Shown piece by piece: positions 30,161 to 52,135 of a stretch of DNA of 64,000 nucleotides. The DNA is from Ministeria vibrans ATCC 50519 (Eukaryota > Protista > Filasterea): contig CALSCP010001674.1 in assembly GCA_943704425.1 (NCBI GenBank), positions 1 through 64,000 of the forward strand, written 5' to 3'. Numbering within the stretch: the first letter of the stretch is position 1; each line of letters opens with the position of its first letter. The translations under genes and the position numbers were made by a program. Below the pieces are notes generated by a model. That model did no database searches, was not told the DNA's origin, and saw only the letters and a program-made list of their open reading frames with translations.

Positions 30161-30198
<38 letters not shown>

Positions 30199-30205
30199 CT
30201 TGTGG

Positions 30206-30252
<47 letters not shown>

Positions 30253-30644
30253 GCTGTTGTGGCGGTTGTTGTTGTTGCGGCTGTTGTTGCTGCTGCTGTT
30301 GTTGTTGTTGTTGGTAATCGCGACGCTGTTCTTTCAATTGCTCGTTTTCCACCTCAAGTTGTCGCACACGCTCGTGCACAATCGCCGAGTCGTCGCTGGC
30401 CTTCTGGACCAATAATGGTTTTGCCGATAGCACACGCGTAAGTCGCTCGTTCTCTTGGCGCAGCGCATGCACCTTGTCCCGCTCCGCTGCGAGTTCACGT
30501 GCCGATTCGGCGCGACGATGGATCGATCGCTCCTGCTCAAGTAAATTTCGCTCAAACCGGTCGCGATGCGATGTCGACAAGGGTACGCTGGCGGACACTG
30601 ACGCAGAGAAAGGGGCATGAACAGACTCCTCTCGTGATTGCTGC

Positions 30645-30680
<36 letters not shown>

Positions 30681-31934
30681 TGGACGTCGCGAAGACACGC
30701 GACTGCATGATCCACTTCAAGGTGTGTCTGTTCGACAAGGTATGCACCCTGGAGCATCGTGTTGTCTAGATGGCGCGCACGACCAGCGTAGTGCACGCCA
30801 CGCAGCTTGTGCAGTGTGTTGCGCAATGCCTCAGTGCACTCAGCCAACTGTTCCTTGATTTCCGATCGTTCGCGCACCACATCCTGTGCCTCGGCAGCGC
30901 GCCTTTCCAAATCGTCAAGTGTGTGTCGCATGCGGAGCAGCTGGGTGCGCAGCTGCGATGCGTTCTCCGCGAGATCGTCCCGTTCCTCCGCCACTCTCTC
31001 GAGTTGCGCCGCCAACTGTGCGCGTTCCTCAACTAACCGTGCCGTGTCGTCACGTACCGTTGCGTGTTGCTGTACCTCGCGTTGGGCCGCTTCACACTCA
31101 TACTTGAGCTTGCCATTGGCAGCGTTTGCGTCGTCCAGGGCACGTCGTAGTTGTTCGACCGCACGCCGATGTGTCGCTGCATCGTGTCCGCGCGCCTCGC
31201 CTCGCACACACTGCGACTTGAGACTCTCCGTGGTAAGCTGCAGCTCGTGTAGATCCCCAGCAAGCTCCGAGCTATGTGCTTTCTCCTCAGCGAGCAACTC
31301 CCGCGTCACCTCCAGTTCGCGCGCCATTTTGTCGCAGCGCTGCTCCGCCTCTCGAGCTGTACTGTCTGCACGCGCCACCAGCTCGCGTTGCCGCCGCTCG
31401 ACGCTCTCCACCGCATCCGACAGTGCTGTGATCCGCACTGCCGCTGCAGACGCGCTCCTTACAGCACTCTCCGGCGCGCTTGACGCTCCTGTCGTCGTGT
31501 CTTCAAAGCGCAACACTCGCCGACTTGTTGCCTCCGCTCCTGTCGTCATCGTGCCCGCTTCCGCTTGCGCGCGCCTGCGACGAGACCGAGGTGATAGTAA
31601 GAGAAACGGCTCCAGCGTCGAAATGAGCTCGTTCATCTCGGACGAGCGCTCATCCCTAAATTCGCAAAAAGCGGATTTCAAACCAAAAAAAAAAAAAAAA
31701 AAAAAAAAACCGTTGAAGTTAAAAGTCGCAAAGGAAAGCAATGCACTTGCATGCGACAAGAAGAAGAGGAAGGAACACCGCCAGGGATAGGATGTGGGGA
31801 CGCAGGCGGCGCGAGGGCGGGCGTGGGGGGCTGCGGCACACACAGACGTACCTTCGAAGTGCATTGAGTTCCTCGCGTATTCTCACCACATCCGCCTCCA
31901 GCATCCGTGCTGCGGCGTCGTCGTGAGAGGACAT
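27698..31934 (-). CDS. Long coiled-coil protein with polyQ tracts and Ser/Pro-rich tail, function unknown (intron 31656-31851)
   Basis: ATG 31934 MSSHDDAAARMLE... spliced in frame to the long ORF; heptad-rich; (CAA/CAG)n at ~30140-30313 and 30637-30678. Confidence 0.7.
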
Positions 31935-32264
31935 GCCAGCACCAACCAACCCAGTGCACGCAGAATAAATAAAGATTACAGATTGAAGTGACTGACTGAG
32001 TTNNNNNNNNGGACTGAGTCTGACTCGGAGTCTCTGATAACTGAGAAGAAAGACGTATTATGTAACAAGTGATTGAACAGTATAATAAGAATAATAATGA
32101 TGGGTTGCTAACATCAGTCGTATACCCCTTTTTAGACACTTTTTGCTATTGTGTTTTTCACGTCTTGTGACTTGTCAATTACTGCTTGAATCTTAGATGA
32201 GAGATATGGATAAATTTTTCTTCGCTCTCAACAACACCTCTCTCTTATTCTCTCTCTCTCTCTC

Positions 32265-35200
32265 TCAAATCATAAGTTCAGTCGCCACCGCAGGCAACCC
32301 AACGTCGGCCGGACCCGCGCCGCTCTTTTTGTCCTTCTTCGCAGCCTTTTTGGCGGCCTTCTCGGCCTTCTCGGCCTCACGCGCCGCCTTCTTGTCCTGC
32401 TTGGTCGGCGTGCCCGCCGCACTCGACGTGCCCGATGGGGGTGTCTCCAGCGACGAGCGCGTTGGCTTCTTCTTCAAACCAAATAGCTTCTTAAAGCCGC
32501 CCTTCTTGGGTGTCGACTCGGTAGACGCAGCAGGCGCAGCAGTAGTAGAGGCCGAAGACGCCTCGGCAGCAGCTGCAGCTGCGGCAGCAGCACCAGGCTG
32601 CTCTTGGCGCGGTGTTGCCGGACTCATGTCCACGGAGCGCTGGCGCTTAGGCGACGCAGCAACAGCGTCGGTCGGAACCGGAGCAGCAGCAGCGGCGGCC
32701 GCAAGTGCAAACGCTGTCTCCTTGCTGTCCTTCTTGGGCTCCTTACCCTTGTTGCTCTTGGGAGCAGCAGCAGTAGCAGCAGCAGGCTCTTCCTGCTTCT
32801 TCGGCACAGCCCCATCGGCTGCCGCCTTCTCTGTCTTTTGCTCCGCCTCGGCAGAAGCAGCAGCAGCAACAGCAGCAGCAGCCTTCTCTGCCGCCTCCGC
32901 CTCCGCTTCCTTCTTCTTCTTCTTCTCTGCCTCCTCTGCGTCCTTGCGCTGCTTCTCCGCCGCCGCCGCCGCCGCCTTGGCATCCTCCTCGGCCTTCTTG
33001 GCCGCCGCTGCGGCTGCCTCCGCCTCCGCCTCTTGCGTGCTTTGATCTGCCTTGCGCTTCTCAGCATCGGCAGCCTCCTTGGCCGCCAGCTCCTTCGCCG
33101 CTGCCTCCTGTGCCGCCAACAGCGTCGCCTGGTGCTCCCGCTCCTCCTCAGCCTGGCGCTCCGTCTTCTCCTGACGCTCTCGCTTCTTCTTCTCAATCGC
33201 CTCCTCCGAGCGACCCTCTGCCTCGCGTGCGAGACGCTCGCGCTCCGCCACCGCAGCCTCTTTGCGTCGCTCCGCCTCGGCCGCCGCCTCCTCGCGCTCC
33301 TTCAGCTCGCGTTCCTTGCGCTCCGTCGCCAGTCGCTCGTGCAACTCCGTCTCCTTGCGCATCTTCTCCTCGGCCTCAGCACGCAAAGCAGCCTCCCGCT
33401 CCTTACGCTCAGCTTCCGCCTGGCTGCTCTGCTCCTTGGCCCACGCCGATCGCTCCAGCGCCGCCGCATCCTCCTCCTCGGCACGTTTCTGACGCGCCGC
33501 CTCAAGTTTCTCCCGTCGCTCACGGTCCTCGGCAAGTCGCGCCGCCTCCGCCTCCTCCGCCTCGGCCAGCAGCTTCGCCTTGGCCGCTTGCGCATCGTCG
33601 CGACGCGATGCTTCCTCCGCCTTTCGCTTCTCCTCCACCGCCTTGACACCGTCGGTACGCTGGCCACGGCGCTTCATTGCCTCCACTGCCTGCTCGTGGT
33701 TCTGCACGCTCTCCGTCGACGCGCGCTCCTCAAACTCCGCATGCATCTTCGCAGCTGTCTCTGCCTCAGCAGCCGTCGCTTGCTTCTCTGCCTCGAGACG
33801 CGCCGCTTCCTTGGCTCGCTCACTCTCAAGTGCCGCACGCGCAGCCGCCTCACGCTCCTGCGCCGCACCCGAGACACGCTCGCGATCTTGCTTGGCACGC
33901 TCCGCTCGCTCAGCCGCACTCTTGACCTCCTGCTCGGCACGCTTCGTCTCCGCCTCGGCACGCGCCTTCTTCTCCGCCGCCAGACGCTCCTCCATAGCTG
34001 CCGCCTGGGTCGCCGCCAACTTCTCAAGCGCCGCCTGCTCGGCACTCGTGCGCGACGCACGCGACTTCTCACGCTCCACACGAGCCGCCTCAATCGCCGC
34101 GGCCGATTTCTTTGCTGCCTCAGCCTCAAGCTTGGCACGCGACGCCTTGGTCTCAGCCAGACGCTTCTGCTCGGCCGACGCGTCGTCGTCGGCTGCCTGC
34201 AGCTGCGCCTTGCGCTCCGACTCCTCCGCCTCGCGCTTCTTTTGCATGCTCGCTGTCTCTGCACCGCCAAACAGCGCATCCGTAAACTTCTTGTAGTCAA
34301 GCTTGTCGTCATTGCCGTCAAACGAATCCATGTTTGCAATGCAATAGTCTGCCTGTTCGCGCGGCAGCGTCTTGTACAGCTCGGCCTTGGTCACGTACGG
34401 ACGCTTCTCGGCTGCCACCGAAAACGACTCAGCAACATCCTCGGCACGGTCCGCATTCTCCGTCTCCAGCGAAATCATGTACGCGTTGTACTCCGCCAGA
34501 CCCACCGTGCCGCTGTGGTTCGAGTCGACAAAGGCCATAATCTTCTTAAAGTCCTCGTTCTCCTGACCGCCGGGGTAGTCGTACCCGAGCGTGCGCAGGC
34601 ACGCGCAAAACTCCGTCGCGTCCAGCGTCCCGTCGCCGTTCTTGTCAAAATGAGCAAAGGTCTCGCGGTATTCCTTCAGCTTCTCATCGCTCACACCCGA
34701 ACTGTCGCGCGCCTTAATCTGCTGCATCAAGTTGCCCTCAAGACGACGGCACAGCTGGTCAAGCTGCTCCCACGCCTGCGCCAGACTCGTCGACGTGTGC
34801 TCCGTGTACTCATTGTCGTAGATTTGCGCCGCCTCCATCTCGGCGCCTGTCTCCTCAATGTCCGCAATGTCCGCTCGCTTGCTCGCCACCTGCTCAGCAA
34901 TGCCCTTCACCGACGCAAGTTGGTCCTCGAGCGTGCCGGTCGCACTCGTCGCAAGCACACGCGTCTTGGTCGCCCATGCATCAAACACGGCCGCCTTGTC
35001 GGCAAACGCCTGGCGCAGCTCCTCGTTGTCCTCCTGGCGCTTCGCCTCGTTGTCCAGCTCGCCAATGCGATCGTCAATCTTCTCCAAAATCACATTCCAT
35101 TTTTCCGTGAGCAAATCCATCGTGAAGGGCGTGTACGGGTTCTTGCCCTGCATGCCCTGCTCCACCAGCTCCGTGTCAATGCGCTCCAGCTCGGCCACGT

Positions 35201-38200
35201 CGCGCTTCAGCTCCTCAAGCTGCTCCTGGTGCGCCAACAGACCTTCCTCGAGCACCGTCACCTCTTGCAGCGAATTGACGCGCACCGGCTCCGACAGGTC
35301 CTCCTCGGCAGTGCCAAGCCACGAGCTGAAAGCGGCCGCCTTCTTCGCAAAGTCCAGCATGCTTGCGTCAATCGCGCGGAAACGCTCGTGCGACTTATCC
35401 AGTGCCGCACGACGCGTCTTGGTCGCGCTCTGCAAACCAGTAAATCGCTCTTGTACCGTGGCAAATCGTGCCGCAATCGTCTCTCCTGCACTGTGGCCGC
35501 CCGCCTTGAGCGACGCACTCTGCTCCGCGAGCTCGTCGACACGCTTCGAAAAGGACGCCACAGTCTTCTCAAGCTTGTCGTGCTCCTCAAGCAGCAATTC
35601 GACGCTGCCCAGATCCGAGCCTTCGTCCGTCGACTGTGCACTTGCCTCGTGCTTCTCCGTCCACGACGTCACCGCATCGGCACTGCGTGTAAAGGAGTGC
35701 AACACCACCGCGTCGTTGAGACTTTGCTTGCGCTTCGCCGCCAGCTCGTCCAACTCGCCCATGGCACTTGTCAGTTCACTCTGACGCTCCGACACAGTCG
35801 CCTTCTGCGAGTGTCCGTTCGCCACAAGCTTGTCGGCAGCTGCTGTCACTTCGCCAAGGATCTTCTTGTGTCCCGACAGCTCAAGCTCGACCGCCACATG
35901 CTGCTTCATCATGCCCTGCGTCGCGGCCAACGTGTCGCCCGTGTCGGCACTTGCCAGCACGGTGCGACGTCCCTTGCACCAGGCGAGCTCTTCGCTCGCG
36001 TCCGCCTCCCACTCAAAGAAGGACACAGACTCATCGAGGGCGGTAGTGCGCGTCGCAAGCGCCGCCATCACAACCTCGCGCTTCGCCTTGACAGCGTCCG
36101 CACGCGCTGCAACTGTTGTCTGCTGCTCGCCACCGCTGCCGCTGCTAGCAAACGTCGCCGCGCGGCTCAACATATCGTCAACACGGGCACTGCGTGCCTG
36201 CACCTCGGTCGCCAGAGCTTGGTGCTTCTTCTGCAGACGCTGCGCCACCGTAAGGTTCGCGCCCAAGTTGGCGTCCGAGGCAATCTTCTCCTTGTTGCCA
36301 AGCCAGCCTTCCTCCTCGGCCAGGCCACGCAGCAGTGTGTGCATCACCGAGGTCGCTTGCAGATTTTCCGCACGCTTGCCGCTCAGTTCCTGCACCTCGG
36401 CATAGCCCGACGACACGGTCGCACCCTTGCTCTCGAACCACGCCGCATCAAAGTGCTTCGCCGCGACAAACTCGTTGGCGCGCGACACGGCTGCCTTAAC
36501 CGCGTCCGCATGCGACTCGATGTCGCTCGCCACAATTTGGTGCTTCTTCACGAGGTTTTGCGTTGCCTTGAGGTCCTTGCCAAAGTCTTCGCTCGCCACA
36601 ACCGCGCGCGTCGCCTTGAGCCACAACTCCAGATCATCAATACTGCGACTGTACTGTTGCTTCTCGGCCGTCGCCGCCATCTTAGCACCCTCTTCGCCAG
36701 CTTGCTCGCGCAGCGCCTCCCAGTTTTTCTTGGTAGTCGCCATGCGTGCCGAAATCTCGCCACTCTTGGGATGGCCCGCGTCCACAAGTGCCTTGCCGGA
36801 CGCCTCGACCTTTCCAACGCGGTCCACGTTGGCATCCAGCTCGCCCGCCAGCGCAATGCCATTGCCGGCCTCGTCGCTGTTCTCCTTAGTGGCAGCACTT
36901 TCGTCGCTAGTGCGCGCCGCGATCCACTCGTCAAGGTCGTCGGCGTCGCGCTCAAACTGATGATGGCGCACGGCGTCGCGCAGCGCATCGCCACGTGAAG
37001 CAGACTTGCCCTGAAGACCGTCCCAGCGCGTTTTAATAGCACCGCTGCGAGCCGTCGCCTCGTCGCCCTTGGGGTTGCCGTTAGCCTTAAGGGCGGCCGC
37101 CGACGCCTCCACCGACGACACCTTGTCGGCCTGCAGCGGCAACTGACTCTCAAACTTGTCGTGCTTCTTGGTGAGCAATTGTGACTCCTCGAGAGACGCA
37201 CCCAAGTCGTCGGTGTCCAGCAGCTGTTCGCTCGACGTGAGCCAGCGTTCCAACTGATCCGCGTCACGGTTGAACTGCTGCAACTCGACTGCCTTCTCCA
37301 GTTCAGCCTTGCGCGTCTCCCAGGCCGCCTGCAGGTCGGCACGAGCCTTCTCGATCTCGCCCATGACCTCCTTGACACGAGTCGACTCGGGATGGTCGCC
37401 CTTGATCAGCGCGTCGCCATCACCAAGCACACGCTCAATGATCTCGTTGCCGGCCGCAATGTCAATGCGTCCGTGCATGTGGTGCTGCAGCATGGCCTCG
37501 GCCGACGACAGATCCTTAGGCTCCTCGCCCGAGGCGTGGCGCGCCGCCAACTCGCTCGCCCACTCATTCACCTCATCGGCCTCGCCCGTAAAACGGTACA
37601 GACGCTCGCTCTTGTCCAAATCGACCCCGCGCTTTGCCACGGCCGCCTGGTACGCACCAAAGCACGCCTGTAGCTCGCCCTGCTTCAACTTCACCTGCTC
37701 CTTGTGCTTAGGGAAGGTCTCGGCGAGCACATCGCCCTCGCCCACGAGCGCACGCACACTCTGTTCGGCGGCAATCACGTCACGCTCAACACCCTCGTGA
37801 CGGCGCAACAGTGCCTTGACACCCGCCAAGTCCTTGCCCTGATCCTCGTCGGCAATCTGCATGTCGAGCGCCGCCTGCTTCGTACCAATCCAGGCCATGC
37901 GCTCGGCCACCTCACGGTTGTACACCTCGAGTTCGCGACCGTCGCTCAACGTGCGCTTCTGATCGGCCATCAAGCACTTGAGTTTGTCCCAGGCCACAAG
38001 AAGATCCGCCTTGCGCTTGTTCGTCACGGTGCGCTCGGGGTGCTCGGCCGCGTCCAGACGCTCCGCGACCAACTTGACGCGATGAACACGCTCCTCCGAC
38101 GCGGTCACACCCGTCTCAAAATGACCCAACTTCTTGAGCACGCTCGCCAGACGATCCACATCGTTGTCGGCCTCATTGCGCTCGGCTACGAGCTGATCAA

Positions 38201-41200
38201 GTGATGTCTGCTTCTGACTGATCATGGCGGCAATTTCGTCTGCATCCAGCTGGAACGAGTGGAACTGCTCCGAGTGGCTCAACTTGTTGCGACGTGTCAT
38301 AGACATGGAGCCCAGCTCGGCCATGGCTGCCATGAGGTCTGCCTTACTCTTGGAGATTTCGGCACTGGCAAAGTGCGATGCGGCCACATAGCTGTCCGCC
38401 TGCTCGCACACGGCATTGACAATCTCCTTGTGCGACGCAATGTCCGCCTCAATGTGTTGCTGTTTCTTTTGCAGACTCTGCACCGCCGCGAGATCCTTCC
38501 CAAAATCTTCGCTGCTCAGCTGCGAGTGCACCTCGCTGTGCCAAGCGTTCATCTCGTCCACAAGACGATTGAGCTGCTGCAGCTCGTGCGCCTCGCGCAG
38601 ACGACGTCCCTTCTCCTCGGTGCGTTGCGACAGCGTGTCCCACGCGTCCATCAGCGTGTCCATACGCGCCTTGATGTCCTCTGAGGCGTAGTGCTGCGCG
38701 CCCACAAGGCCGTCGGCCTGGTCGCGCAGCTGGTCCACACGCGAGCGGTTCGCTGACACGTCCGCGCTGAACACCTCGTGCTTTTGCACCTTGCCCGGCA
38801 AGTTTGTCGCCTCCTTGTAGTTCTCGTCGCTTGCCACCTTGACACGGTCGCCAATCCACATGTCGAGCTCGTCGACGTCGCGGTAGAACACCTGAAGGTC
38901 GTGCGACGCTTCCAGCTTGGCGTTGCGCTCGTCGGCAGCAACAAGGAACTCCTCCCACGAGTTCTCGAGCGCCTCACGTCGTGCCTCAATGTTCTTCGCG
39001 TCGTAGTGACCCTCGTCCACAAGCTGGTCGGCGAGCGCGAGCAGTCCCTCAACCTTGTCCTTCTCAGGCGTAATCGTCTTCATAAATTCCTCGAGCTTCT
39101 TGGAGAGCTCGTCCACGTCGACAATCGAGTCGCCCAGCTTGTCGGAGCTGGCAAACTCCTTGCCGTGACGAATCCACTCCTCGGCCGTGTCAATGTCTCG
39201 GTAGAGTTCGTGTGCACGCACACCCTGCTCGAGCATAGACTGTCGCTCCGTCCACGTCTCGTCCAGCTTCTTGTGCTCCGCATCCAAATGGTCAATCGCC
39301 TCCTGAATCTGCGCCTTGTCCGGGTGGTCGTCGCTCACAAGCTTGCTGCCGGCGTCCATGACATTGAGCAGCGACACCGAGCCCATGTCAATCTGCTCGC
39401 GGTACTCTTTGTTCTGCTTGAGCAGCGCTTCGGCACGCACCAAGTCCGTCGCAAGTTCCTCGGCACCCACCTCGGTGCCCTTCTTTTCCATCCACTCGAG
39501 CGTGTCGCGGTAGCTCTCCAGGAACTTCTGAAGACTCGCCGCGGCCTCCAGTCGTCGCTTGCGCTCCGCCGAGATCGACTGAAGCATGCCGACGAGGCGA
39601 TCCACCGACTCCTCCATCTCCTTGACTTGCGTCGCGTCGCTCGGCTGGTCCTCCTGCAGCTTGGCACTGCGACGCTTGAGACTGTCAACCTTCTCGACCA
39701 CGGCCGCGTGACCGTGCTCGGCGGCGTCATGACGACGGCACAACATCTCGACCGAGTTGACGTCCTTGCCAAAGTCCTCGATGGTCACCTCGCCAATCTT
39801 TTCGTTGATCCAATCTTGAAGATCATCACCGTCGCGCAGGAAAGTCTGCAGCACCATGTTGTCGTCGAGAGTGTTCTTGCGGTCGTCGGAGAGCTCCTGC
39901 AACGCCTTCCAGTGGGCATCCAGCTGTCCGTCACGCTCGCGAATACGCTCTGCCTCGGGGTGCTTCTCGTCGTCGCACAGACGCGTCGCGGTCGCCTTGA
40001 GCGCCTGCAAACGCTCCTCGTTGGCTGCCATGTCGTTGTCCAAGTTGACGTACTTTTTGCGCAGCGCGTCAATGCGTTCGAGGTCGCTCTCGGTCTCAAC
40101 AGCAGGCGCCGCCGAATCCTTCTCGCTAATCCACGCATCGAGCTCGTCCGCGTCCACCAGGTAGGCAAAGAGCTCTTCGGCCTGGTTGAGTTTGGCACGG
40201 CGCGTTGCGCTCAGATCCTTCACCTCGGCATAGCGGGACTCGACGTTCTTCTGGCGCTCTTGGATGCGCTCCGCGTCAAAATGACCATCATCAACGTGGC
40301 GCTGCGTCTGCTGCGCCGACAAGTCGATGATCTCGGCGTGCGCCGTGATGTCGTCCTCGACAAGCGCGTGCTGCTTGATAAGGTTGCGTGTCGCCTGCAA
40401 GTCCTTGCCGTAGTCCTCGCTGCTGACAGTCGGGTGCACCTCGGTGAGCCACATCTCAATATCGTCGAGCTGGTTGAAAAACTCGTGCTGAGCGTGGGCC
40501 TCGGTGACCTTTTGGCCGCGGTCCTTGCAGCCCGACTGGAGCGTGTCCCACTTCTCGCGCAGCAATGCCAGACGTGCCGCGATGCTGTCGGCGGAAGGGT
40601 GACCGTCGGTCACGAGCTTGTCGCCGTTGGCCGCGACGTTTCCGACGCGCTCGGCGTTGGCCGCAAGTTCCGCCTGAAACTCGTCTTGTTCGTGCATCTT
40701 CTCGGAGATGTTGGCGGGGTCCTTGTAAGAATCGTCGTTGGCAAAGGCGAGCTTCTCGTCCATCCAGCCGTTGATCTCGTCAGCGTCCGTCTCGAAGCGA
40801 AGCTGCTGGCATGCGGCGTCGAGGGCGCTCGCGCGCTTGTCCGACAGCGCCAGAAGGTTCTCCCAACGTTCGTTGACACCCGCCACCATCGTGTTGATCT
40901 CATCAGCGGCGTAGTGATCCGCCTTGACCAGCTTGTCACCCGTCTCGCGAATGTCGTCAATCTTGCCTTGCTGCGGTGGCACCGTCTTCGAGAAGTTGGT
41001 GTGCTTCTTGGTGAGCGCCTCGGCCGCCTCGACAGTACTACCGGTGTCGTCGCTAGCGAGACGTTTCTCACTGGCGTCCATCCACGCGTGCGACTCGTCG
41101 ACGTCGCGTTTCAGCGCGTGCAGTTGACAACTCTGATCGAGCTGCTGCTTGCGAGCCTGGTAGGCGGCCTCAAGGTCCGCCTGAGCCTTCTCAAGATCAG

Positions 41201-44200
41201 CGGTACGCGAGACGACGTCATCCTTGGCAAAGTGATCGCGTGCCACGAGACGGTCGGTGGCCGCCTTGACCGCCTTGACGGCCACCGCGGACGCGTCCAC
41301 CTCCGTTTTGAGTTCGTCGTGGCGTGCACTGAGCACTTCGGCGCCCGCCAGGTCGTCGGCGAGCTCGGCTGTGCCCACACGGTCGTTGAGGTCGCTAATG
41401 GTAGCGCGCGCGTCCTGTTCGTCGGCAAGCAACTTGTTGAGGGCGAGTGAGTCGTCGAGACGCTCGCGGCGGTCGGCGGCCGCCACAAGCAATTCGCGGT
41501 GTGCCTTTGCGATACCCTCCCGCTTCTCATTGAGATGATCACGCTCGCCAGGGTGGTCAGCCATGAGCGTAATGCAGTCGCGTGTGAGTTCCTTGACCTG
41601 CGACTCCAGCGCCGCGATCTCTCGCTCGACATCGTCGTGCTTGCGCTGGAACTCTTCGACCGAGGGCACGTCCTTGCCGCACTCTTGCGAGCGCATGCCC
41701 TGCGTCATCTCCTGCATGGTCTGCACGAGCTTGTCGGCGTCGCCACGGAAGGCACGAGTCTCGGCAATGCTCGTGGTTGACTCGTGGGTGCTGGCAATGT
41801 CGACCTTGAGCGCCGTCCAGCGTGCAATGAGTGTCTCTTCGCGATCGACAATCTCCATGCTCTTGGGGTGGTCGGCCTTGAGAAGGTCGGTGACGGTAGT
41901 GGTGATAGCGTCCATTTGCTTCTCGTGCTTGACAATGTCCGCCTCAAGATCAGCGCCACGCTTCTGAATAACATTGGCAGTGTCCTCGGCGCCGTCGTCG
42001 GCGCCCGCTGCGATAGCCTCCTTCAGGCTGGCGACGGCACCCTCCTTCTCGGCGACAAACGCGTCGAGTTCGTCGGCGTCGCGCACAAAGTCGAACATGC
42101 TCAGCGACTGGTCGAGCTTGGTCTTGCGGACGGCCGCCTGCTTTTGCAGCAGCGAAAACTGTGTCTGGAGTGCCTTGAGCTGCGAGTCAAATGTGTCGGG
42201 GACGGCGCTGGCGTCCTCATTGAGCTTGCCCATGACCGACGCATAGTTGTCGACATCGACAATGACAGCCTCGTGGCCAGCAATGAGGGCGTCGGCGCTG
42301 TCGGCGTCGGTGCCGAGATCCTCGCGGTTCGCAAGCGCCAGCTGTTGCTTCACCCACGACTCGGCATCACTGAGATCGGCAGCCACCTGGAAGACACGCA
42401 CCGATTGCTCGAGTGCTGTCTTGCGCGTAGCCGAGGTATCGCGCAGCTCCTGAGTGACCGAGGCGAGTTGCGCGGCAGCCTCAGAGGCGGCTGCGGTCTC
42501 GTTGGTGGGCAAAGCGGCGGCACGGGCGGGTAGTTCACCAATGCGCGGCTCGTGCGAGCCCAGTTCGGCGGCGAGTGTCTCGTGCTTCTTGAGCAGCGAC
42601 TGGGCGCTCGTCAGGTCTGTGCCACAACCAGTGTTGGACACGACCAACAACTTATCCTTCACCCAAGCGCTCTCCTCGTTGAGATCGTCGTAAAAGGCAA
42701 ACACTGCCTGTTTCGACTCGAGACTTTGACGTCGTTCCGTCACAGCAGTCTGTAAAAAAAAAATCAAAAATTAATATTGATTGTTAATATTATTAATAAT
42801 AATAATAATTATTATTATTAATTATTTTTATCAATTTATGTATTGTTTATATTTTTCTCCTTCTTTTCTTTACCTTGAGGGCATTAAAGTCGCTGGTAAT
42901 GTCGGCTGCACGAGCAGCAATAGTCTTCGCGTCGGGATGGTTTTCCTTGGCAAAAGAGTCGGCGTCAGCCGTGAGAGCCTGCGTGAGGTCACTGCAACGA
43001 GCAACTTCGGCGTCGATGAGAGCGAGATCCTCAAGGGCACCCTGGACACTGGCCAGGTCGTCGGTGGCGGGTTCAATCATGACGTCGTCGTGGGCGTCGG
43101 CAACCGACTTGGACGCGAGGTTTGCGCTACGATGGAAACGCTGGACGTGGAACACCGCCTCGAGATGATCGCCGCGCGCCTCGAGCGCCTGCTTAAGATC
43201 CGACCACTGCTCACGGATGGACTCAGCCTTGGCCAGGACCACGCCGTCTTCGTCGCGGTAGGAGCCCTCGTTGAGTTTGTCGGCGACCGCGATGAGGTTC
43301 TCTACGCGGTCCTTGTGGGTGAGCACGTCGGACTCGGTGGCACGCAACTTGCGCACGTTGGCCTCGGCGGAGGCGTAGTCGGTGGCGGCCGCAGCGTCGT
43401 CGGCGGCCGCAGCGGCAAGCGCCGCGTTGGTCTCGTCGAACCACTTAAGACGCGTGTCAGCCTTGCGCTTAAACTTGGTGGCGAGCTGCTCGAGCTCTTG
43501 AAGACGATGAAGTTCCTTGCGCACATGCGCCTCGTAGCCCTTTTCCTGCTCCTCGAGGGCACCCCAAGCGTCGTTGATGTCGCTCAAAAGCATGCCGCTG
43601 GGAGGCGACCAGACATCACGCTTGGCCGTTGCGAGTTTGGTTTGAAGAGTAAAGAGGTGCGCCTCAAGGTCGCCCTTCATGATGGACTTGGGCGGCTTCT
43701 CCTGCGAACGGTACGTCTTGAAGTCGGCCGCAATCTTCTCGACCTCGCCAAAGCTGTTGGGCAGGTCGCGGTCACTCATGGCAACATGCTTGACCTTGAT
43801 CCAGCGCAATAGCTCAGTGACGCGCGCCTGGTAGTCGCCCTTCATGCGGTCCATCTCGTCCATAAAGTCAAGCACCTTGCCGACACGACGGCCCGCCACG
43901 TCCTCCGTCTGTGCCTGCGAGAAGTAGTGATAGTACGCCGCAACGTACGTCATGACAGCACGGTCGTCAGGTCGCTCCACTCCGGCAATGTCGTCCACGT
44001 CCAAAAGGCGCGCAATGCCCAAGTCCTAGTAATAATAATAGTATAAAAAAACGTCGCTATTGTTTTTTTGTGTTTGTGTGGGAGTTGTTTTGCGTACGTC
44101 TTGGGCGACACGAAAGGCGTTCTCGAGGGCCTCTTCGGGGGTCATCTTTTCGACCTCCTTCCAGTTGATGAGGTCGGGGCGATGCTTGTGAATGATGGCG

Positions 44201-45559
44201 TTAAAGGCGAGACCTGACTTCCATGACTTGGAGAAGTCTTGCACGTTGACATCGTCGTAGTTGGCTGTCTTGCGCTGGCACCACAGCAGCAATGCTTCCT
44301 TGGCGGACAGGGCGTCCACAGAAATATCCTAGAATTGCAGGAATAATAATAATAATAATTATTAATAATTAATATTAGCGTCATTATTATTATTATAATG
44401 TTTATAATAATTATAATAATTTTTTGTTTTCTTGATACTCACTTGGATTTGGAAACGGAGAATGACAGTCCAGAGGAGACCCAACATAAGTTTGTGGTTT
44501 CCATCGACAATGTCCTCGGCACTGATGTTCTCAAGATGAACCTGAAGACAAGGATTATATGTGTTAAGACAAAAGTGCCGTGTTATGATCATATCATGTT
44601 GCAGTGTGTACCTTTGATTCGACAAACGAGAGAACCTTGCGCACATTTCCAATCTGAAGAATAGAAGAAAGGAGGGCAGTGCAGGGTCAACACGAGGCGT
44701 CTGCGTCTGCGGATGTGTGGTTTCGCCACAAGCGCAGTCCGTCTTTGCTTACCTTGTGCACTCGCATCTTTCCGCGCTCAGGCTTGCCGGGTGACTCGCC
44801 CGAGATGGCAGAGAGAAGCGTCAAAAGCTTGGTTCCATCCTGAAAGTGCAGAATATGAACACGGATGAGCAGCAATGACAAAAAAGACGAAAGTAAAGAT
44901 GACAAAAAAAAAAAAAAAAAAAAAAACAAGCGGTTCAGCTGAAGACAAATCGGGATGTAATGGGCAGGGTGTGCTCGAGGAGACGACGGCAGGTGTGTGG
45001 GGCGTGCGTCGGGGTGCGCTTTGGGAGTGGAACGAGACGCTGATGGGTTGAAAATGCGGTCGGGCAAACAATAGGGAGTTTGTTCGTGACGAATGGAACA
45101 CAAAAAAACGGAGGAAAGAGAGAGAATCGAACAGAACTACACTCGGAGGAGACTCAGATGAACGCACGGCAGCTGCACAGTCGCGCTGGAGCAGTCACAG
45201 TCGTCTGCGCTACTTTTTTTTGCTTTCTTCTTTTTTTTTTTTTTTTTTCTTNNNNNNNNNNAAAAAAAAAGAGAGAGAGTTAGAGAGAGAGAGAGAAGAC
45301 AAAGCAACACAATGCACAAATGACAATAAAAAAAGGGAAGGGTAGCGACCGACACGTCAACCCCGTACCGATCGCGTCCATAGCTGGGAGGGGCCCGTCG
45401 AGGGTAGTCGTCGTCGCGACGCGGAGGCCAGTCAGCGGGCGGAGACCGTTCACTGCGAAACTTTTCCCGTCGTCCGCCTGCAGGGGCGTCTTCGTCGGCA
45501 GCATCGACGCGTGATCCACGTCCTTCGTCTTCAGAGTCACTTGCGTTTGATCCAGGCAT
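32265..45559 (-). CDS. Giant single-chain spectrin: CH1-CH2 actin-binding domain, ~28 spectrin repeats, EF hands, ~660-aa E/K/R/A-rich tail
   Basis: Small exons 44840-44098 encode CH motifs ([11 protein letters not shown]|IGNV..., [33 protein letters not shown]|[35 protein letters not shown]). Exon ~44024-42873 splices in phase 0 (FNALK|TAVTE) to a ~10.5-kb exon with ~106-aa repeats and EF hands ([14 protein letters not shown]). Linkage of exon 1 (45559) across the N gap is uncertain. Confidence 0.9.
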
Positions 45560-45664
45560 TCCAATTGTGTAATTAAAAAAAATTGACCGATTCGAACATT
45601 TCTAATTCTGATCTCTCTTTTTGATTTTTTTTGAGTCGACTCACTGACTACCTAGCGATCGCTG

Positions 45665-45700
<36 letters not shown>

Positions 45701-45745
45701 TCACACACACTGCTGTACTTGTTCTTACATCTCGGATAAGTAGCC

Positions 45746-46978
45746 ATGCCTCGCGTGCTGTACGTCAGCCTTGAATTTGTCGAGCCCATCTTCAGTGGAA
45801 ATGGGGTTCTCAGTCGCTCGCACGTCCGAGGCCTGCTTGCCTGTGGCTGGCACGTGTGTGTCCTGACGGGCGGAGATGCCAATGGACATGGGTCGTGCGA
45901 TGCAGCGGTGCGCACCGGAGCAGACGGGGATGTGTTGGAGGCGACGCACAAGTTGTCGGGACACATTGTGCCGCTGTCTGTCTGGCGAAGGACCGATCGC
46001 GCCGCTGCTTACCGTGAGTTTGAAGCAGGCTCGAGAGTGCTGCGTCAGCAGATTGTTGATACTTTTGCGCCCGATGTGGTTGTGGCGGTGGACTGGACTG
46101 GACACCTGGCGACCAGAGCCCTCGCTCTGGCTTCATCCGTTCCCGTCGTCTTTGCCAACTACTGCGTCTATGCCCTTGCTGCAGGCTGCTCCGACAACGA
46201 CCGAGCATTCTATGTGGAGCACGAGACGGCCGCAATGCGCTCGGCCAGGCTCGTCCTGCCTCTGTGTCCTGCCGATGCCCAATCGTTATGTCGTCTCGCC
46301 CACATCGACTACCCCCAACCCAATATCATTCCACTCTTACCGCCGCTGCGTCGCGACATTGCCACAGTGGCGCAATCCATGCTAATAGGCGACGACGATG
46401 ACGACGACACGACTCGACAGTACCTCACTTGCTGCGTTCGTCTCCACCCTCAAAAGCAAAGTGATGTCTTTGTGCGCCTCATCGAGGACCTCGTCGCACG
46501 CGGCGCCTTCGATGCGCTTGGTGTCACCCCATTGCTGTGTGGTGCAGCTGCCGACGCTGCCTACGCCGAGTCCATGCGCACCCGTCTAGCGGCAGTGTGT
46601 CCCAACGCTCGCATCATCCGCGACTTTCTCACTCCCGAGGCGCTCGCACAAGTCCTTCGCCAGACTCTTTTGAACATCCATCCAAACAGCTACGAAGCGT
46701 ATGGCATGACCATGGTCGAGGCGGCTGCCTGTGGCGCACCCACTCTGGTGGATGCCAGTGGACAGATTGGCGGTGCGGAGCTGTTGCGTCCCGCACACGA
46801 CGAGATCTTTGCGCGCGCCTATGAATCACCTGAAGCGATCGCCAATGCGGTCACAGCACTGCTAGCCGATCGCAAGGAGTTGAGACGCGTTGCGCGCAAA
46901 GCACAGGCTCGCGCCTTGTCGTACAGCGAAGACGATGTTGGGCGAAAGCTCTCGGAGCATCTCTTTAGCGTGCTGTAA
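45746..46978 (+). CDS. GT-B glycosyltransferase, family 4-like, intronless
   Basis: N-terminal RVLYVSLEF..P.FSGNG; VRL..QK; EX7E motif YEAYGMTMVEAAACGAP. Confidence 0.8.
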   Translation: MPRVLYVSLEFVEPIFSGNGVLSRSHVRGLLACGWHVCVLTGGDANGHGSCDAAVRTGADGDVLEATHKLSGHIVPLSVWRRTDRAAAYREFEAGSRVLRQQIVDTFAPDVVVAVDWTGHLATRALALASSVPVVFANYCVYALAAGCSDNDRAFYVEHETAAMRSARLVLPLCPADAQSLCRLAHIDYPQPNIIPLLPPLRRDIATVAQSMLIGDDDDDDTTRQYLTCCVRLHPQKQSDVFVRLIEDLVARGAFDALGVTPLLCGAAADAAYAESMRTRLAAVCPNARIIRDFLTPEALAQVLRQTLLNIHPNSYEAYGMTMVEAAACGAPTLVDASGQIGGAELLRPAHDEIFARAYESPEAIANAVTALLADRKELRRVARKAQARALSYSEDDVGRKLSEHLFSVL

Positions 46979-47212
46979 TGTGATATTCGAATATAATTGA
47001 ATGTATAGTGTATACAAATAAAATATTACAATAAAAGGCATGACCATCATATGACACATCATTAGTGAATAATATCATAAAGTTTACACTTTGAGTCACT
47101 TTCTACTTTCTACTTCGTAATGCTGGTTTGGGACTTTGGGTTTGATTTTTGAGTGAATAATCGTGTGCTAAAAACTGCAAATTTTTATTGATTTTCATCT
47201 TCTCATTTTGGA

Positions 47213-49861
47213 ATGGAACCAGCAACACCTTCTGAGGCACCTCAGTTGTCTCAGAAACGCATCCAACGGCTCGACGAAACCGTCGTCAACCGAATTGCAG
47301 CGGGCGAAGTAGCCACATCAAAACAACCCTCTTCTCTCATTCACACACACTCTCTCTCTCTTGTCTCCCTTTCGCCTTCCTCTTGTTAGGTCATCCAACG
47401 CCCGGCAAATGCACTCAAGGAGCTCATTGAGAACAGCCTGGATGCCGGCTCCACGGTCATCTCAGTCAACGTCAAAGGCGGTGGCATGAAAATGCTCCAG
47501 ATTGTCGACAATGGCCACGGCATTCAGGTAGCGATGCCTCCCCGACACGCCAGCACCCTACTCAGCTGTCCTTTGTGGTGCCACAACACTCTCCTTCTTT
47601 CCTTCGCTCCTTTTGTCGTCGTTTTCGTGTTTCGCGCGCGTTTTCAGCTCTCTCTCTCTCCTCTCTCTCTCCCTCTCCTCTCATGCGTCGATCCTCTCCT
47701 CTAGCGCGACGACATGGGCATTGTGTGCGAACGATTTACAACGAGCAAGCTGCAAAACTTCGACGATTTGCGCAGTATCAACACTTTTGGGTTTCGTGGC
47801 GAAGCACTTGCCAGTATCAGCCATGTCGCCCATGTCACCATTGTGACGCGCACCGAGGGGTCCCCCTGCGCCTACAAGTAAGCGGAGAGAGAATTTGGGG
47901 GAGGGGGAGAGTGGGGCGTTTTAACACATCTTTTAAGAGCACACTATGCGGATGGCAAACTTGTGGCAGGACCCAACCGACAAAATGCCGAGCCGTATCC
48001 TTGCGCAGGAGTTCAAGGCACCATTATCACGGCCGAGGACCTTTTCTTTAATGTGGCCACACGTCGCAAGGCGCTCAAGAGCGCTGCCGACGAGTACTCA
48101 CGCATCGCCGAGGTGGTCACACGCTATGCCATTCACAATGCAGGCGTTGCTTTCTCCCTGAAGAAGGCAAGTAACATCAATCATTTCCGTCAAACACATC
48201 AAATCTAATGTGAATGTTTTGCATGTGGTAGGTGGGCGAAAAGAGCACAGGCGAGGTGCGCACGGTAACGGGTGCGTCGCGTGAGGACAACATTCGCGTG
48301 GTGTTCGGTCCGGCCGTCGCACGCGAACTTCTCAAGGTGTCGGCCGAGGAGACACGCGGGGCGCCCTTTCGTATGGACGGACTCATTACTAATGCCAACT
48401 ACAGCGTTAAAAAGGGCATTTATCTTTTCTTCATCAACCGTAAGTGGGGTTTGTTTATTTTTGTTTTCATGTGTGCAGTAACATTGCCACTTAGACCGAC
48501 TTGTGGACTGCGTGTCACTTCGCAAAGCACTTGAGTCTGTTTATGCGCCCTACTTGCCCAAAACTGGCTTTCCCTTTGTGTATATGAGCTTGGAAATGGA
48601 TGGGAACAACGTCGATGTGAACGTGCATCCGACCAAGAAAGAGGTCAGAGAGGGAGGGAGAAAATGATCATTATTCTTGCTAATTTTTTTCTATTTTTTT
48701 TTCTTTGTACAGGTGCACTTTATGTATGAGGATACGATTGTAGAGAGCATTCAAAAGGCCGTTGAGGCTGCGCTGTTGGGCAGCAATGCGTCACGCACGT
48801 ACTTTACACAAAGTCTGTTGCCGGGTGCCACTACGCCCGGTGTGGCCAGTGCTGCAGCTGCAGCTGCGTCCGCCGATGGTAACGATGAGAAGAAGCCCTT
48901 GCGTGAGGACTCTAGTGCTCGGAAGGGCAAGGAGCCGACGGTGTACGAGAATCGCATGGTGCGCACCGACTCTAAGGCACGCACACTCGAGTCATTCTTG
49001 CAGGTGGTGCAACGTGCCAAGTCGACTACGAGTGCGCCTCCCAACGAAAGTGATGCGATGGAGATGGTGACGACGACAAACCTCGTTGATGAGAATAGCA
49101 CCACTATCGTCACCACCACGGATACAGGCGCAGGCACCACGACAGTCCGAGAGCGAAAGGCGCCAGAAAAGGAATGCTCGGATGCGTCGGAAGATTTGGA
49201 GTTTGCTGCTGGAGTGGCTCTTGACTTGGTGGAGGTGCCTCCTGTGCCAGCGTCTGTGCCATCTACGGAGAAGCCGTCACCCGAAATGACCAAGACCAAG
49301 GCGACACCCGTCAAAGAGCCTGTTCAAAGCACTCTCGAGGGTGTGCTACAGAAGAGGAAGGCAATCGATGTCGAAGAAGATGACGATGAAATGGAAGGAG
49401 ATGGACCGACGAGCAAACGAACGCGCACCCTAGATGCACCACCACCACCCACCACAACCACCACCAATACTGCCACTACATCCACCACTGTCAAAGCAGG
49501 TCGACCTCGTCGCAAAGTTCTCCTGGAGAGCATTCTTCAATTGCGCGCCGAAGCAAAAAGTGCTGAACACTCTGGTAAGTCGAGCCCAAAAGGAAGGTTC
49601 TAATTTTTGTTGAATTTTTTGATTTGTTTTTGGTAGGTCTTCGCGCAATGTTTGCGGGACACACATTTGTTGGGTGTGTCAACGAGTCACAAGCGCTAAT
49701 GCAGTACTCAACTGATCTCTATCTGGTCAATGTGACAAAACTCAGGTAGAGGACGAGAGAAAGAGGGAGAGAAAAACAAAGTGATAGAGAGAGAAACAAA
49801 GAAAAACAAATTAATAGTAATAATTATTAATAATAATAATTATTATTATTAATAATTTATG

Positions 49862-49921
<60 letters not shown>

Positions 49922-51045
49922 GTAATAATAATAGTAATAACAATAGTAATAATAATAATAATAGTAATATAATAATAATAATAATAATAAAAATAGCAGC
50001 AACAGCAATAGTAGTAATAATAATAATAATAATTATTATTATTATAATAATTAATTTAATAATAATAATTAAAATAATAATAAATTATTTTTCTACTTTC
50101 TCTCGATCCGCTATTGATTTCTATTAATTCTTATTTTTATTAATATTTGTAGTAAGGAAATGTTCACGCAACTAGTGTACCACGACTTCTGCAACTTTGG
50201 ACGGATTAGCATTGAACCGGCCGCGTCGGTGCATGAGCTGCTGCTGATTGCACTCGACGACCCCACCATCGTGTGCAGTGTTGATACGGAAGTGCCAAAG
50301 GAGGACATTGCGAAGGCAAGTCAAATACAAAGGGAACCTAGCTACACACTACACATTTCTTATTCTTTTCCTTTTGTTTAGTACCTCTCTGAATTGCTCG
50401 TGAGCAAAAGTTCAATGCTGTCCGACTACTTTTCCATTGACATTGATGAGACTGAGGGCACCCTCTCGTCATTGCCTGTCCTTCTCACTGACTATGTGCC
50501 CGACTTGGACCGTCTTCCTCATTTCATTCTGAGACTCGCCCGAAACGTAACACACTCTACTGTTCTGCAAGAGATCACAGTTGAACAGGAGTTTAATGTC
50601 TGTCTATTAAAAACAGGTGGACTGGGAAGAGGAAAAGGGCTGTTTCAAAGGCATTGCGCGCGAATTGGGCGTTTTCTACTCTATGCGACCCTCTCTGTTC
50701 ACCCCCGAAATGATCAACAACACGAACGAAGTACACTGCATTGCATTTGTTCTCCATGCACAAAGGCTCATGCGCGCTCACACTTTCTCATAGGTTGTAC
50801 CCGTGGTCGAGGTGGCTGATGGGACCTCCGACACCCATGTTCCTCCCACTGTGCCCATCAGTGGCGCCGGCTCTGTCTCCACCTCTGCGTCGTCCCTTGC
50901 CACTTGGAAATGGACCGTTGAGCACCTGATCTTCCGTGCCTTCCGCTCGCCTCTCTTCTCGCCCCCCGCTCGTTTCGCCAATGATCGCTCTGTCCTTCAG
51001 ATTGCCAGTCTACCCGAACTCTACAAAGTCTTTGAGCGCTGCTGA
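47213..51045 (+). CDS. MLH1: DNA mismatch repair protein MLH1, multi-exon
   Basis: VVNRIAAGE|[63 protein letters not shown], terminal LYKVFERC*. Confidence 0.97.
49861..49990. repeat. (AAT)n-type microsatellite in an MLH1 intron
   Basis: Seen directly. Confidence 0.9.
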
Positions 51046-51126
51046 TGCAACCTCACACTGCAATTTTATCTCTCCTTGTTTACTATAATACAATTTGTAC
51101 ATGTCATCCCGTGCATCTTTTGACGA

Positions 51127-51753: not shown

Positions 51754-51817
51754 GTAAATACTATTAATTTTGTCTTGATTTGGTCTCAGTCTGACTATAA
51801 TCAATCACTTTTTCCTA

Positions 51818-52096
51818 ATGTTTCGCCGACCTCGAGCCGACGACGATCTTGATGCTCTTGCGAAAGAGGTTGGCGCACCGATCAGCGTTGATGAATGACA
51901 GGGCGACTCACACACGTGCTTGCGCTCGTCTTTAGTTTATGGACGCCTCGGCAAAGCCAACGTATCGTGCGTCGCCTCGCGTTGTCCTGACCGAACGCCA
52001 GCCTGGCGATGCGCCCACCATTGACGACGCGCCCATGCCACCGCCCGCGAGTGGCAAGCAGTCTCTCTTTGCGCAGCGGCACCAGCGACAGCAGAC

Positions 52097-52135
<39 letters not shown>

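What the first reader, a model, noticed from the sequence alone, without database searches (positions are those of the whole stretch)
32265..45559. Unsplit beta-alpha spectrin: one chain with the beta-spectrin/actinin head and the alpha-spectrin tail (candidate giant-actinin intermediate)
Seen: one spliced reading frame runs from CH1-CH2 through beta/actinin-type repeats 1-2 (RRVGKVLD...EKPPK..KGDLE..LF.LQTKL...PPSG...SDIN.AW..LE..E). It continues through about 28 repeats counted by eye into a C-terminus resembling alpha-spectrin repeats ~17-21 and its EF hands ([11 protein letters not shown]...AEEDL.EPVR.NSL.E, NPYT.FTM..L...W, DN.YTEH...LAQ.W.QLDQL, LR.LGYD, MIS.ETEN, PYVTK.ELY..L.REQADYC). 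No SH3, PH or partial tetramerisation repeat was seen. Established: animal spectrin is an alpha/beta heterodimer, with the actin-binding domain on beta and the EF hands on alpha. It is proposed to derive from an elongated alpha-actinin gene that later split. Inference: this protein is either a surviving pre-split form or a secondary beta-alpha fusion. It could form long antiparallel homodimers, or fold back on itself through the beta1-2/alpha20-21 pairing site, making it a distinct kind of actin cross-linker or membrane skeleton.
Basis: partly seen in the sequence, partly recalled or inferred. Interest (0 to 1): 0.93.

Follow-up and report, generated by a model that had tools for sequence, protein, structure and literature searches.

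The report
Single-chain spectrin of an animal relative
This protist gene makes one 4083-residue chain that starts like animal beta-spectrin and ends like alpha-spectrin, and each end branches just outside the matching animal and choanoflagellate family, so it looks like a living relative of the unsplit ancestor long proposed for spectrin.

Summary
The core observation holds. A minus-strand gene encodes CH1-CH2, 28 spectrin repeats, two EF-hand pairs and a 660-residue charged tail, with no SH3 or PH domain. The ATG exon at 45368-45559 belongs to a neighbouring SRRT/ARS2-like gene. RNA contigs splice exon 3 (44839) to two exons at 65.3-65.6 kb of the same contig, outside the window, and these supply the missing start of CH1. 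The N gap is therefore not in the coding path and most likely marks a mis-scaffold.

In maximum-likelihood trees the head (R1-R2) is sister to all beta and beta-heavy spectrins (100/99; crown 99/96). The tail (R27-R28 plus EF hands) is sister to all alpha-spectrins (100/100). Alpha-actinins and the elongated actinins of other protists fall outside both groups.

The architecture is not unique. Two paralogues in this genome have it. So do Capsaspora CAOG_08407 (16 repeats), which is already public, and one related transcript. The scan flagged the same idea on other pieces of this genome (s1-763906, s1-763920).

My reading is a filasterean single-chain spectrin, probably never split. I found no paper that describes this. 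The proposed antiparallel homodimer is inferred, not tested.

The parts
44753..44839 (-). Exon 3, the middle of CH1 (29 aa). Exons 1 and 2, which hold the start codon and the first part of CH1, lie outside the window at C1674:65483-65590 and 65325-65372.
   Evidence: Spliced RNA contigs; upstream letters located; exon table with GT-AG sites and 19/28 identity to Capsaspora CH1
44612..44653 (-). Exon 4, CH1 (14 aa)
   Evidence: RNA joints in three runs; splice sites
44443..44541 (-). Exon 5, end of CH1 (33 aa)
   Evidence: RNA joints; Pfam CH positions 74-108; boundaries read
44098..44328 (-). Exon 6, most of CH2 (77 aa)
   Evidence: Pfam CH 5.9e-18; RNA joints; 49/74 identity to Capsaspora
42874..44025 (-). 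Exon 7 (384 aa): end of CH2, neck, repeats R1 (about 43498-43890) and R2 (43159-43482), and most of R3
   Evidence: Pfam spectrin 9e-29; PDB matches to actinin R1-R2 and beta-spectrin R1-R3, both 195 bits; N-terminal tree
32265..42749 (-). Exon 8: a single 10.5 kb exon (3494 aa plus stop) with the end of R3, R4-R28, the EF hands and the tail
   Evidence: Open frame; intron 42750-42873 removed in an RNA contig; a 9875-base DNA contig from an independent 2022 run enters it from 42753
34725..42704 (-). Repeats R4-R28. R7-R24 show an old six-repeat periodicity. R27-R28 carry the wider spacing typical of alpha-spectrin repeats 20-21.
   Evidence: boundaries; matches to alpha and beta repeats; self-comparison, 25-39% identity at offsets 6 and 12
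34476..34673 (-). EF hands 1-2, with canonical-looking Ca-binding loops
   Evidence: Pfam EF-hand_1 6.6e-11, EF-hand_7 2e-6; sequence
34266..34457 (-). EF hands 3-4 (Ca-insensitive EF hand of the actinin/spectrin type)
   Evidence: Pfam PF08726 4.2e-16; same coordinates in the genome search
32268..34247 (-). Tail of 660 aa: about 450 aa rich in E, R, K and A, followed by an A/S/T/P-rich stretch
   Evidence: Translation; composition; tails of the same kind follow the EF hands in both paralogues, in P0002 and in Capsaspora
32463..32510 (-). Short polybasic-hydrophobic motif near the C-terminus (16 aa), followed by a lysine-rich end
   Evidence: Position; similar motifs near the C-termini of P0002 and Capsaspora CAOG_08407
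45252..45261 (.). Assembly gap between exon 3 and the neighbouring SRRT-like exon. It is not in the coding path and is a probable misjoin.

Best explanation
The gene encodes a single-chain spectrin of a filasterean protist, most likely Ministeria vibrans or a near relative. The 4083-residue chain carries, in order: the actin-binding CH1-CH2 head and repeats 1-2, which in animals sit on beta-spectrin; 26 further repeats; and then the last repeats and EF hands, which in animals sit on alpha-spectrin. A long charged tail follows and ends in a short basic-hydrophobic motif. Both ends branch as sister to the whole alpha family or the whole beta family of choanoflagellates and animals. The gene therefore descends from a spectrin that had not yet been divided into two subunits, although its rod has since grown in this lineage.

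Inferred mechanism: two chains pair antiparallel, with R1-R2 of one chain against R27-R28 of the other, as in alpha-actinin and at the spectrin dimer nucleation site. That would give a rod of roughly 140 nm (my own estimate at about 5 nm per repeat, not from a tool result) with an actin-binding head and a Ca-sensing EF domain at each end. Topologically this equals a spectrin tetramer without the non-covalent head-to-head joint. The tail may act as a spacer, and its terminal basic motif may act as a membrane or calmodulin contact.
For: Shown:
- Domain content and order.
- Spliced RNA contigs in three runs join the CH1 exons to the large exon. One 7319-base contig runs about 5.4 kb into the large exon, which by arithmetic on its length puts its end near 37.4 kb; only the part down to 42600 was actually laid on the window.
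- The rest of the coding sequence is one uninterrupted frame.
- C-terminal tree: crown alpha-spectrin 100/100; window + two paralogues + P0002 97/82; the union 100/100, with all actinins outside.
- N-terminal tree: crown beta/beta-heavy 99/96; with the window, C596 and P0002 added, 100/99.
- R27 and R28 match only alpha repeats 20 and 21 (188-215 against 66 or less). R1 and R2 match only beta repeats 1 and 2.
- Capsaspora CAOG_08407 (CH, 16 repeats, EF, Ca-insensitive EF in 2704 aa) and the transcript-derived P0002 share the architecture.
- All three alpha-type C-termini in this genome are linked to CH heads.
- The genome has a collagen IV C4 domain, which PMC13366479 says is known outside animals only in Ministeria.
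Against: - No single RNA contig was shown to reach from CH1 to the EF hands. The 3' third rests on the open frame and on orthologues.
- By raw score the head is no closer to beta-spectrin than to actinin, so its placement rests on the tree.
- The rod is not collinear with alpha or beta beyond the ends and has expanded in this lineage, so the protein is not a frozen ancestor.
- The scaffold puts exons 1-2 about 20 kb from exon 3, which points to an assembly error or a very unusual intron.
Confidence: 0.75

Rival explanations
1. Secondary fusion. Alpha and beta genes were already separate before filastereans diverged and were later fused head-to-tail in the filasterean line. The fusion lost the PH domain, the SH3 domain and the partial repeats.
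For: The trees fit this as well as they fit a never-split gene, because both ends simply follow the species tree. The rod has clearly been remodelled.
Against: It needs two events, a split and then a fusion, instead of one. No SH3, PH or half-repeat remnant is seen in the window protein, its paralogues, P0002 or Capsaspora. No repeat matches both the beta C-terminal and the alpha N-terminal partial repeats. No separate alpha or beta gene was found in this genome.
Confidence: 0.15
2. Independent elongation. This is an alpha-actinin that grew many repeats on its own, like the giant actinins of amoebae and metamonads, and only resembles spectrin.
For: Elongated CH...EF proteins of 1400-2700 aa are common in the databases, for example in Vermistella and Anaeramoeba. 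The head scores the same against actinin and beta-spectrin.
Against: Both ends of those giant actinins group with actinins, not with this protein. The tail scores 300-317 bits to alpha-spectrins against about 200 to actinins and 85-145 to the giant actinins.
Confidence: 0.04
3. Assembly or annotation artefact. Two genes, one beta-like and one alpha-like, are joined by a chimeric assembly or are read through in silico.
For: The scaffold is demonstrably unreliable around 45.25 kb and probably around 65.27 kb. The paralogues are broken by gaps.
Against: The frame stays open for 10.5 kb with no N. Contigs from an independent DNA run and from an RNA run extend into the large exon, 9.9 kb and 7.3 kb long. 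Capsaspora, with a 3.8 Mb contig, and a transcript contig from another sample encode the same CH-to-EF chain.
Confidence: 0.04

Closest known systems
Capsaspora owczarzaki CAOG_08407 (NCBI 'hypothetical protein'; UniRef 'Spectrin beta chain')
   Same: The same order of parts on one chain: CH1-CH2, spectrin repeats, EF hands, Ca-insensitive EF hand, an E/R/K-rich tail and a terminal polybasic-hydrophobic motif. R1, R2, R4, R5, R27 and R28 of the window protein match its repeats 1, 2, 4, 5, 15 and 16.
   Different: It has 16 repeats and 2704 aa against 28 repeats and 4083 aa. Identity is only about a third (131/381 over exon 7). The window protein has two further paralogues in its own genome.
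Alpha-spectrin (non-erythroid; for example Monosiga brevicollis MONBRDRAFT_14504 and Salpingoeca rosetta spectrin)
   Same: The last repeats, with R23-R28 roughly collinear with the last six alpha repeats, the wide spacing of the final two repeats, and both EF-hand pairs. Identity is 42-44% over 391 aa.
   Different: Alpha-spectrin has no actin-binding head, starts with a partial repeat used for tetramer formation, and carries an SH3 domain in its ninth repeat. None of these is seen here. Alpha-spectrin also lacks a long tail after the EF hands.
Beta- and beta-heavy spectrin
   Same: CH1-CH2 head and R1-R2, with weaker matches for R4-R5. The tree places the head as sister to this family.
   Different: Beta chains end in a partial repeat and a PH domain and have no EF hands. 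Choanoflagellate beta chains carry an SH3 domain in repeat 5. None of this is present here.
Alpha-actinin
   Same: The same plan in miniature: head, rod, EF hands on one chain, working as an antiparallel homodimer. Matches to solved actinin structures cover both ends.
   Different: Actinin has four repeats. Both ends of the window protein group with spectrins rather than actinins.
Elongated alpha-actinins of other protists (Vermistella 2711 aa, Anaeramoeba 2447 aa, many of about 1530 aa)
   Same: CH head, many repeats and EF hands on one chain.
   Different: Both of their ends branch among actinins. They are separate elongations and not relatives of spectrin.

Membership tests
Spectrin superfamily (actinin/spectrin plan) | Tandem CH domains, spectrin repeats and a C-terminal calmodulin-like EF domain | tested here: met
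   Pfam CH, Spectrin (28 repeats), EF-hand and EFhand_Ca_insen. The start of CH1 was recovered from exons at 65.3-65.6 kb.
Alpha-spectrin | C-terminal repeats 20-21 and EF hands of the alpha type | tested here: met
   300-317 bits to alpha-spectrins; specific repeat matches; sister to crown alpha with 100/100 support
Alpha-spectrin | No actin-binding head; N-terminal partial repeat; SH3 domain in the rod | tested here: not met
   CH1-CH2 is present. No SH3 at E<=0.01. No repeat matches the alpha partial repeat well.
Beta-spectrin | CH1-CH2 head with R1-R2 of the beta type | tested here: met
   R1 and R2 match beta repeats 1 and 2 only. The tree joins the head to beta and beta-heavy spectrins with 100/99 support. 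Raw scores equal those to actinin.
Beta-spectrin | C-terminal partial repeat and PH domain; no EF hands | tested here: not met
   No PH domain at E<=0.01, and EF hands are present.
Beta-spectrin | Ankyrin-binding repeats 14-15 | not tested
   No specific match of any repeat to beta repeats 14-15 stood out. Binding cannot be judged from sequence here.
Alpha-actinin | Four repeats; ends that group with actinins | tested here: not met
   28 repeats. Both ends fall outside the actinins.
Filasterean single-chain spectrin (CAOG_08407-like; my grouping, not a named family) | CH head, alpha-type EF end and charged tail with a basic terminal motif on one chain; a clade at both ends | tested here: met
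   For the window gene, continuity from CH to EF on one transcript is shown only for about the first 60%.
Any spectrin or actinin | Antiparallel pairing of R1-R2 with the last two repeats | not testable with these tools

The most novel reading that the evidence does not exclude
This family is the direct, never-divided descendant of the proto-spectrin. Alpha and beta subunits arose from such a single-chain gene in the common stem of choanoflagellates and animals. The homodimer of the filasterean chain is then the covalent equivalent of the animal (alpha-beta)2 tetramer.
Probability: 0.55. Interest if true: 0.85.

Novelty: new variant of a known kind. Interest (0 to 1): 0.78.

Why it matters
Textbook accounts derive spectrin from an alpha-actinin-like gene that lengthened and was then divided into alpha and beta chains. 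In the papers I could search, spectrin is dated from its presence in choanoflagellates (PMC4550062) or placed in the filozoan ancestor (PMC13366479), and no extant undivided form is described. If the filasterean proteins are such a form, several points of the model become testable at the bench:
- whether a single chain forms the long antiparallel rod;
- when the SH3 domain, the PH domain, ankyrin binding and the tetramer joint were added;
- whether the two subunits arose by cutting one gene or by duplication followed by complementary loss.

Capsaspora can be transfected and has a shorter, 16-repeat orthologue, so the experiments are practical.

Tried and rejected
It is spliced to contig C1468 and belongs to an SRRT/ARS2-like gene.
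- I searched all three frames of 44840-46300 for the start of CH1 and found nothing.
This says nothing about binding.
- I looked for one repeat that matches both the beta C-terminal and the alpha N-terminal half-repeats, which would be a trace of the cut or of a fusion. The best matches fall on different repeats (R11 against R15/R21), so there is no result.
- I tried to map the whole rod collinearly onto alpha or beta. Only the ends map cleanly; the middle matches several paralogous blocks.
- A crude PH detection by similarity was unreliable, so I replaced it with Pfam scans.
- Literature searches for an unsplit filasterean spectrin or for CAOG_08407 found nothing. The key spectrin-evolution reviews are not in the searchable library, so this is not proof of absence.
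- The spliced, joined protein was never sent to a search tool. Exons were searched one by one by reference, so no whole-protein search or fold was made.
Full report
WHAT IS THERE

On the minus strand, one frame stays open from 42767 to the TGA at 32267-32265. Pfam finds 25 spectrin repeats in it (E=0, 1154 bits), an EF-hand pair and a Ca-insensitive EF hand (4e-16). The short frames upstream add three more repeats, CH2 and the end of CH1. No SH3 or PH domain appears at E<=0.01. A repeat profile built from the protein itself gives 3 + 25 = 28 repeats. It also shows the last two repeats set further apart, exactly as in alpha-spectrins. After the EF hands the frame continues for 660 residues, rich in A, E, K and R.

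THE GAP AND THE 5' END (TESTED FIRST)

The exons:
- Contigs from three RNA-type runs are spliced at GT-AG sites. Together with a base-level reading of the sequence and the exon table, they give exons 44839-44753, 44653-44612, 44541-44443, 44328-44098, 44025-42874 and 42749 onward.
- Upstream of 44839 these contigs carry 174-181 bases that lie nowhere in 44843-45800. No frame there encodes the start of CH1.
- The missing letters sit at C1674:65328-65357. Around them are two exons, 65590-65483 and 65372-65325. They start at the first ATG of the transcript and encode the canonical start of CH1, which aligns with the Capsaspora orthologue.
- The coding sequence is 12249 bases, or 4083 residues.

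That contig begins with a T run and encodes an SRRT/ARS2-like protein.
- C1468 is 12.9 kb long, carries further genes, and does not end in sequence that could meet 45251.
- Right after the A run that follows exon 2, a myosin motor exon begins without its upstream exons.
- The simplest reading is that the block from 45262 to about 65270 was placed between exon 2 and exon 3 by mistake at homopolymer runs. The alternative is a real intron of more than 33 kb holding many genes, which I rate at about 15%.
- Either way the gap is not in the coding path.

Evidence for continuity of the large exon:
- A 9875-base contig from an independent 2022 DNA run enters the large exon at 42753.
- A 7319-base spliced contig runs from the 5' end about 5.4 kb into it.
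- I have no read evidence for the last third.

WHAT THE ENDS ARE RELATED TO

The last 391 residues before the tail score as follows:
- 300-317 bits (42-44% identity) to non-erythroid alpha-spectrins, including those of Monosiga and Salpingoeca;
- about 200 bits to alpha-actinin-2 and 188 bits to erythroid alpha-spectrin;
- 85-145 bits to elongated actinins of other protists.

The head exon scores the same, 195 bits, to actinin and to beta-spectrin.

Careful maximum-likelihood trees (LG+C20, ultrafast bootstrap / SH-aLRT) give:
- C-terminus: crown alpha-spectrins 100/100; window plus paralogues C572 and C738 100/96; with P0002 added 97/82; all of these together 100/100, with every actinin outside.
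- N-terminus: crown beta and beta-heavy spectrins 99/96; with the window, C596 and P0002 added 100/99, again with actinins and giant actinins outside.

With the root among the actinins, each end is the sister of one whole subunit family.

THE ROD

- R1 and R2 match only beta repeats 1 and 2. R27 and R28 match only alpha repeats 20 and 21. R23-R28 run roughly parallel to the last six alpha repeats, and R4-R5 match beta repeats 4-5 weakly.
- The middle repeats resemble alpha and beta-heavy repeats more than conventional beta repeats.
- The middle repeats fall into six classes that recur with period six (R7-12, R13-18, R19-24). These copies are old, at 25-39% identity. Some repeats are closer to an alpha-spectrin repeat than to any repeat of their own chain, for example R16 (240 against 170).
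- The 16-repeat Capsaspora protein lines up with beta repeats 1-7 at its start and with the last five alpha repeats at its end.
- The arithmetic 28 = 16 + 2x6 fits growth by six-repeat blocks. I could not map the blocks cleanly, so this is a suggestion only.

THE FAMILY AND THE ORGANISM

- The genome (29.7 Mb) has four matches to the Ca-insensitive EF hand: this gene, C572, C738 and a weak one on C1345.
- C572 carries CH exons, about 50 repeats and the EF end in one locus.
- C596 (CH plus at least 15 repeats, cut by the contig end) overlaps C738 by 109 bases at 100% identity, just past an N gap, so these are also one CH-to-EF gene.
- None of them has an SH3 or PH domain. I found no separate alpha-type or beta-type gene.
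- Outside this genome, P0002 (2616 aa, from an intron-free 8.1 kb contig of run SRR19044621) and Capsaspora CAOG_08407 (2704 aa) have the same plan with 16 repeats.
- The genome encodes a collagen IV C4 domain. PMC13366479 says this is known outside animals only in the marine filasterean Ministeria vibrans. Near-identical sequence is also held by marine and algal metagenome runs.
- From this and the Capsaspora sister relationship I infer a Ministeria-like filasterean. This is an inference, not an identification.

HOW IT PROBABLY WORKS (INFERRED)

- In alpha-actinin, and at the spectrin dimer nucleation site, R1-R2 of one chain lie against the last two repeats of an antiparallel partner. This brings the EF hands next to the partner's head (established knowledge; the solved structures are matched).
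- A chain that carries both sites can form an antiparallel homodimer with a head and an EF domain at each end. With 28 repeats the rod would be about 140 nm long (my own estimate at about 5 nm per repeat, not from a tool result). This has the topology of the animal tetramer without its non-covalent joint.
- The first two EF loops look canonical, so Ca regulation is plausible.
- The tail (about 450 E/R/K/A-rich residues, then a low-complexity stretch) ends in a basic-hydrophobic motif. That motif recurs near the C-termini of P0002 and Capsaspora. It may be a membrane or calmodulin contact that stands in for the missing PH domain. This is a guess.
- Fold-back of one chain on itself cannot be excluded.

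RIVALS

- A secondary fusion fits the trees equally well, but it needs an extra event and has left no remnant that I could detect.
- Independent elongation of an actinin is contradicted at both ends by the trees.
- A chimeric assembly of the open frame is unlikely, given the independent contigs and the orthologues.

NOVELTY

- The idea of an undivided intermediate is old.
- The searchable papers say only that spectrin is present in choanoflagellates (PMC4550062) or was gained in the filozoan ancestor (PMC13366479, PMC12132279). None describes a single-chain form, and CAOG_08407 is mentioned in none.
- The main reviews on spectrin evolution are not in that library, so prior description cannot be excluded.
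- Other readers of this scan raised the same idea on other pieces of this genome.

LIMITS

- The joined spliced protein was not searched or folded; exons were used separately by reference.
- Only the 5' region was examined with reads.
- The N-terminal placement rests on about 284 alignment columns.

Noticed in passing
window 45368-45559 (-) and locus L015/L017 (contig C1468, 12.9 kb): First exon of an SRRT/ARS2-like gene. RNA joins it to C1468, which starts with a T run and carries the rest of the gene (itself interrupted by an N run at 2567-2693) plus other genes. So C1468, not position 45251, is the true neighbour of 45262.
   Followed up: yes
window 45262-64000 and C1674:64001-65270 (L001, L016): This block of about 20 kb is flanked by homopolymer runs and lies between exon 2 and exon 3 of the spectrin gene. 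It is probably misplaced in the scaffold. A myosin motor exon starts about 50 bases after the A run near 65.2 kb, and its 5' exons are missing.
   Followed up: partly
window 45746-46978 (+): A 410-aa family 4 glycosyltransferase (Pfam Glycos_transf_1 1.6e-11), divergent from the SRRT-like exon.
   Followed up: partly
window 27698-31864 (-): A 1388-aa open frame just downstream of the spectrin gene with no Pfam match. A second N gap lies at 32003-32010, between it and the spectrin stop codon.
   Followed up: no
contig C572:21.8-41.6 kb (L006-L008): Paralogue with about 50 repeats. Several repeats give identical Pfam scores at a spacing of about 3.8-3.9 kb, and there is an N gap at 31933-31941. 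It either holds recent block copies or is an uncertain assembly. CH exons of a shorter, actinin-like gene lie just upstream, near 17.9 kb.
   Followed up: partly
contigs C596:1-109 and C738:82904-83012, plus small contigs C1983, C2579, C1561, C284, C1916: A 100% identical overlap of 109 bases links the CH-bearing C596 to the EF-bearing C738. The same stretch also matches several short contigs made only of spectrin repeats, so the rod of this third paralogue is collapsed or fragmented.
   Followed up: partly
contig C1345:102766-115854 (-) (L009, L010): A 4363-aa open frame with two CH domains, only one clear Pfam spectrin repeat and a weak EF region. It is a very divergent member of the superfamily.
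   Followed up: partly
contig C372:34129-34714 (-): A collagen IV C4 (NC1) domain, 88 bits. I used it here only as a clue to the organism.
   Followed up: partly
locus P0270 (Capsaspora) compared with alpha and beta spectrins: Repeats 6-8 of the Capsaspora chain match both beta repeats 6-7 and alpha repeats 2-4. Either the two animal subunits overlap on the same ancestral repeats, which would favour duplication with complementary loss over a simple cut, or these are paralogous blocks.
   Followed up: partly
window 43129 and 43171; 44062: A marine polyA RNA run shows A>G and G>A differences in exon 7. The 2022 DNA run has one extra T in the intron after 44062. These are probably strain differences or homopolymer errors.
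   Followed up: no
window 32604-36998 (+) and other long antisense frames: Very long open frames lie on the opposite strand of the spectrin exon (up to 1464 aa). I take them to be a by-product of the G+C-rich, stop-poor repeat sequence rather than genes; I ran no test of this.
   Followed up: no
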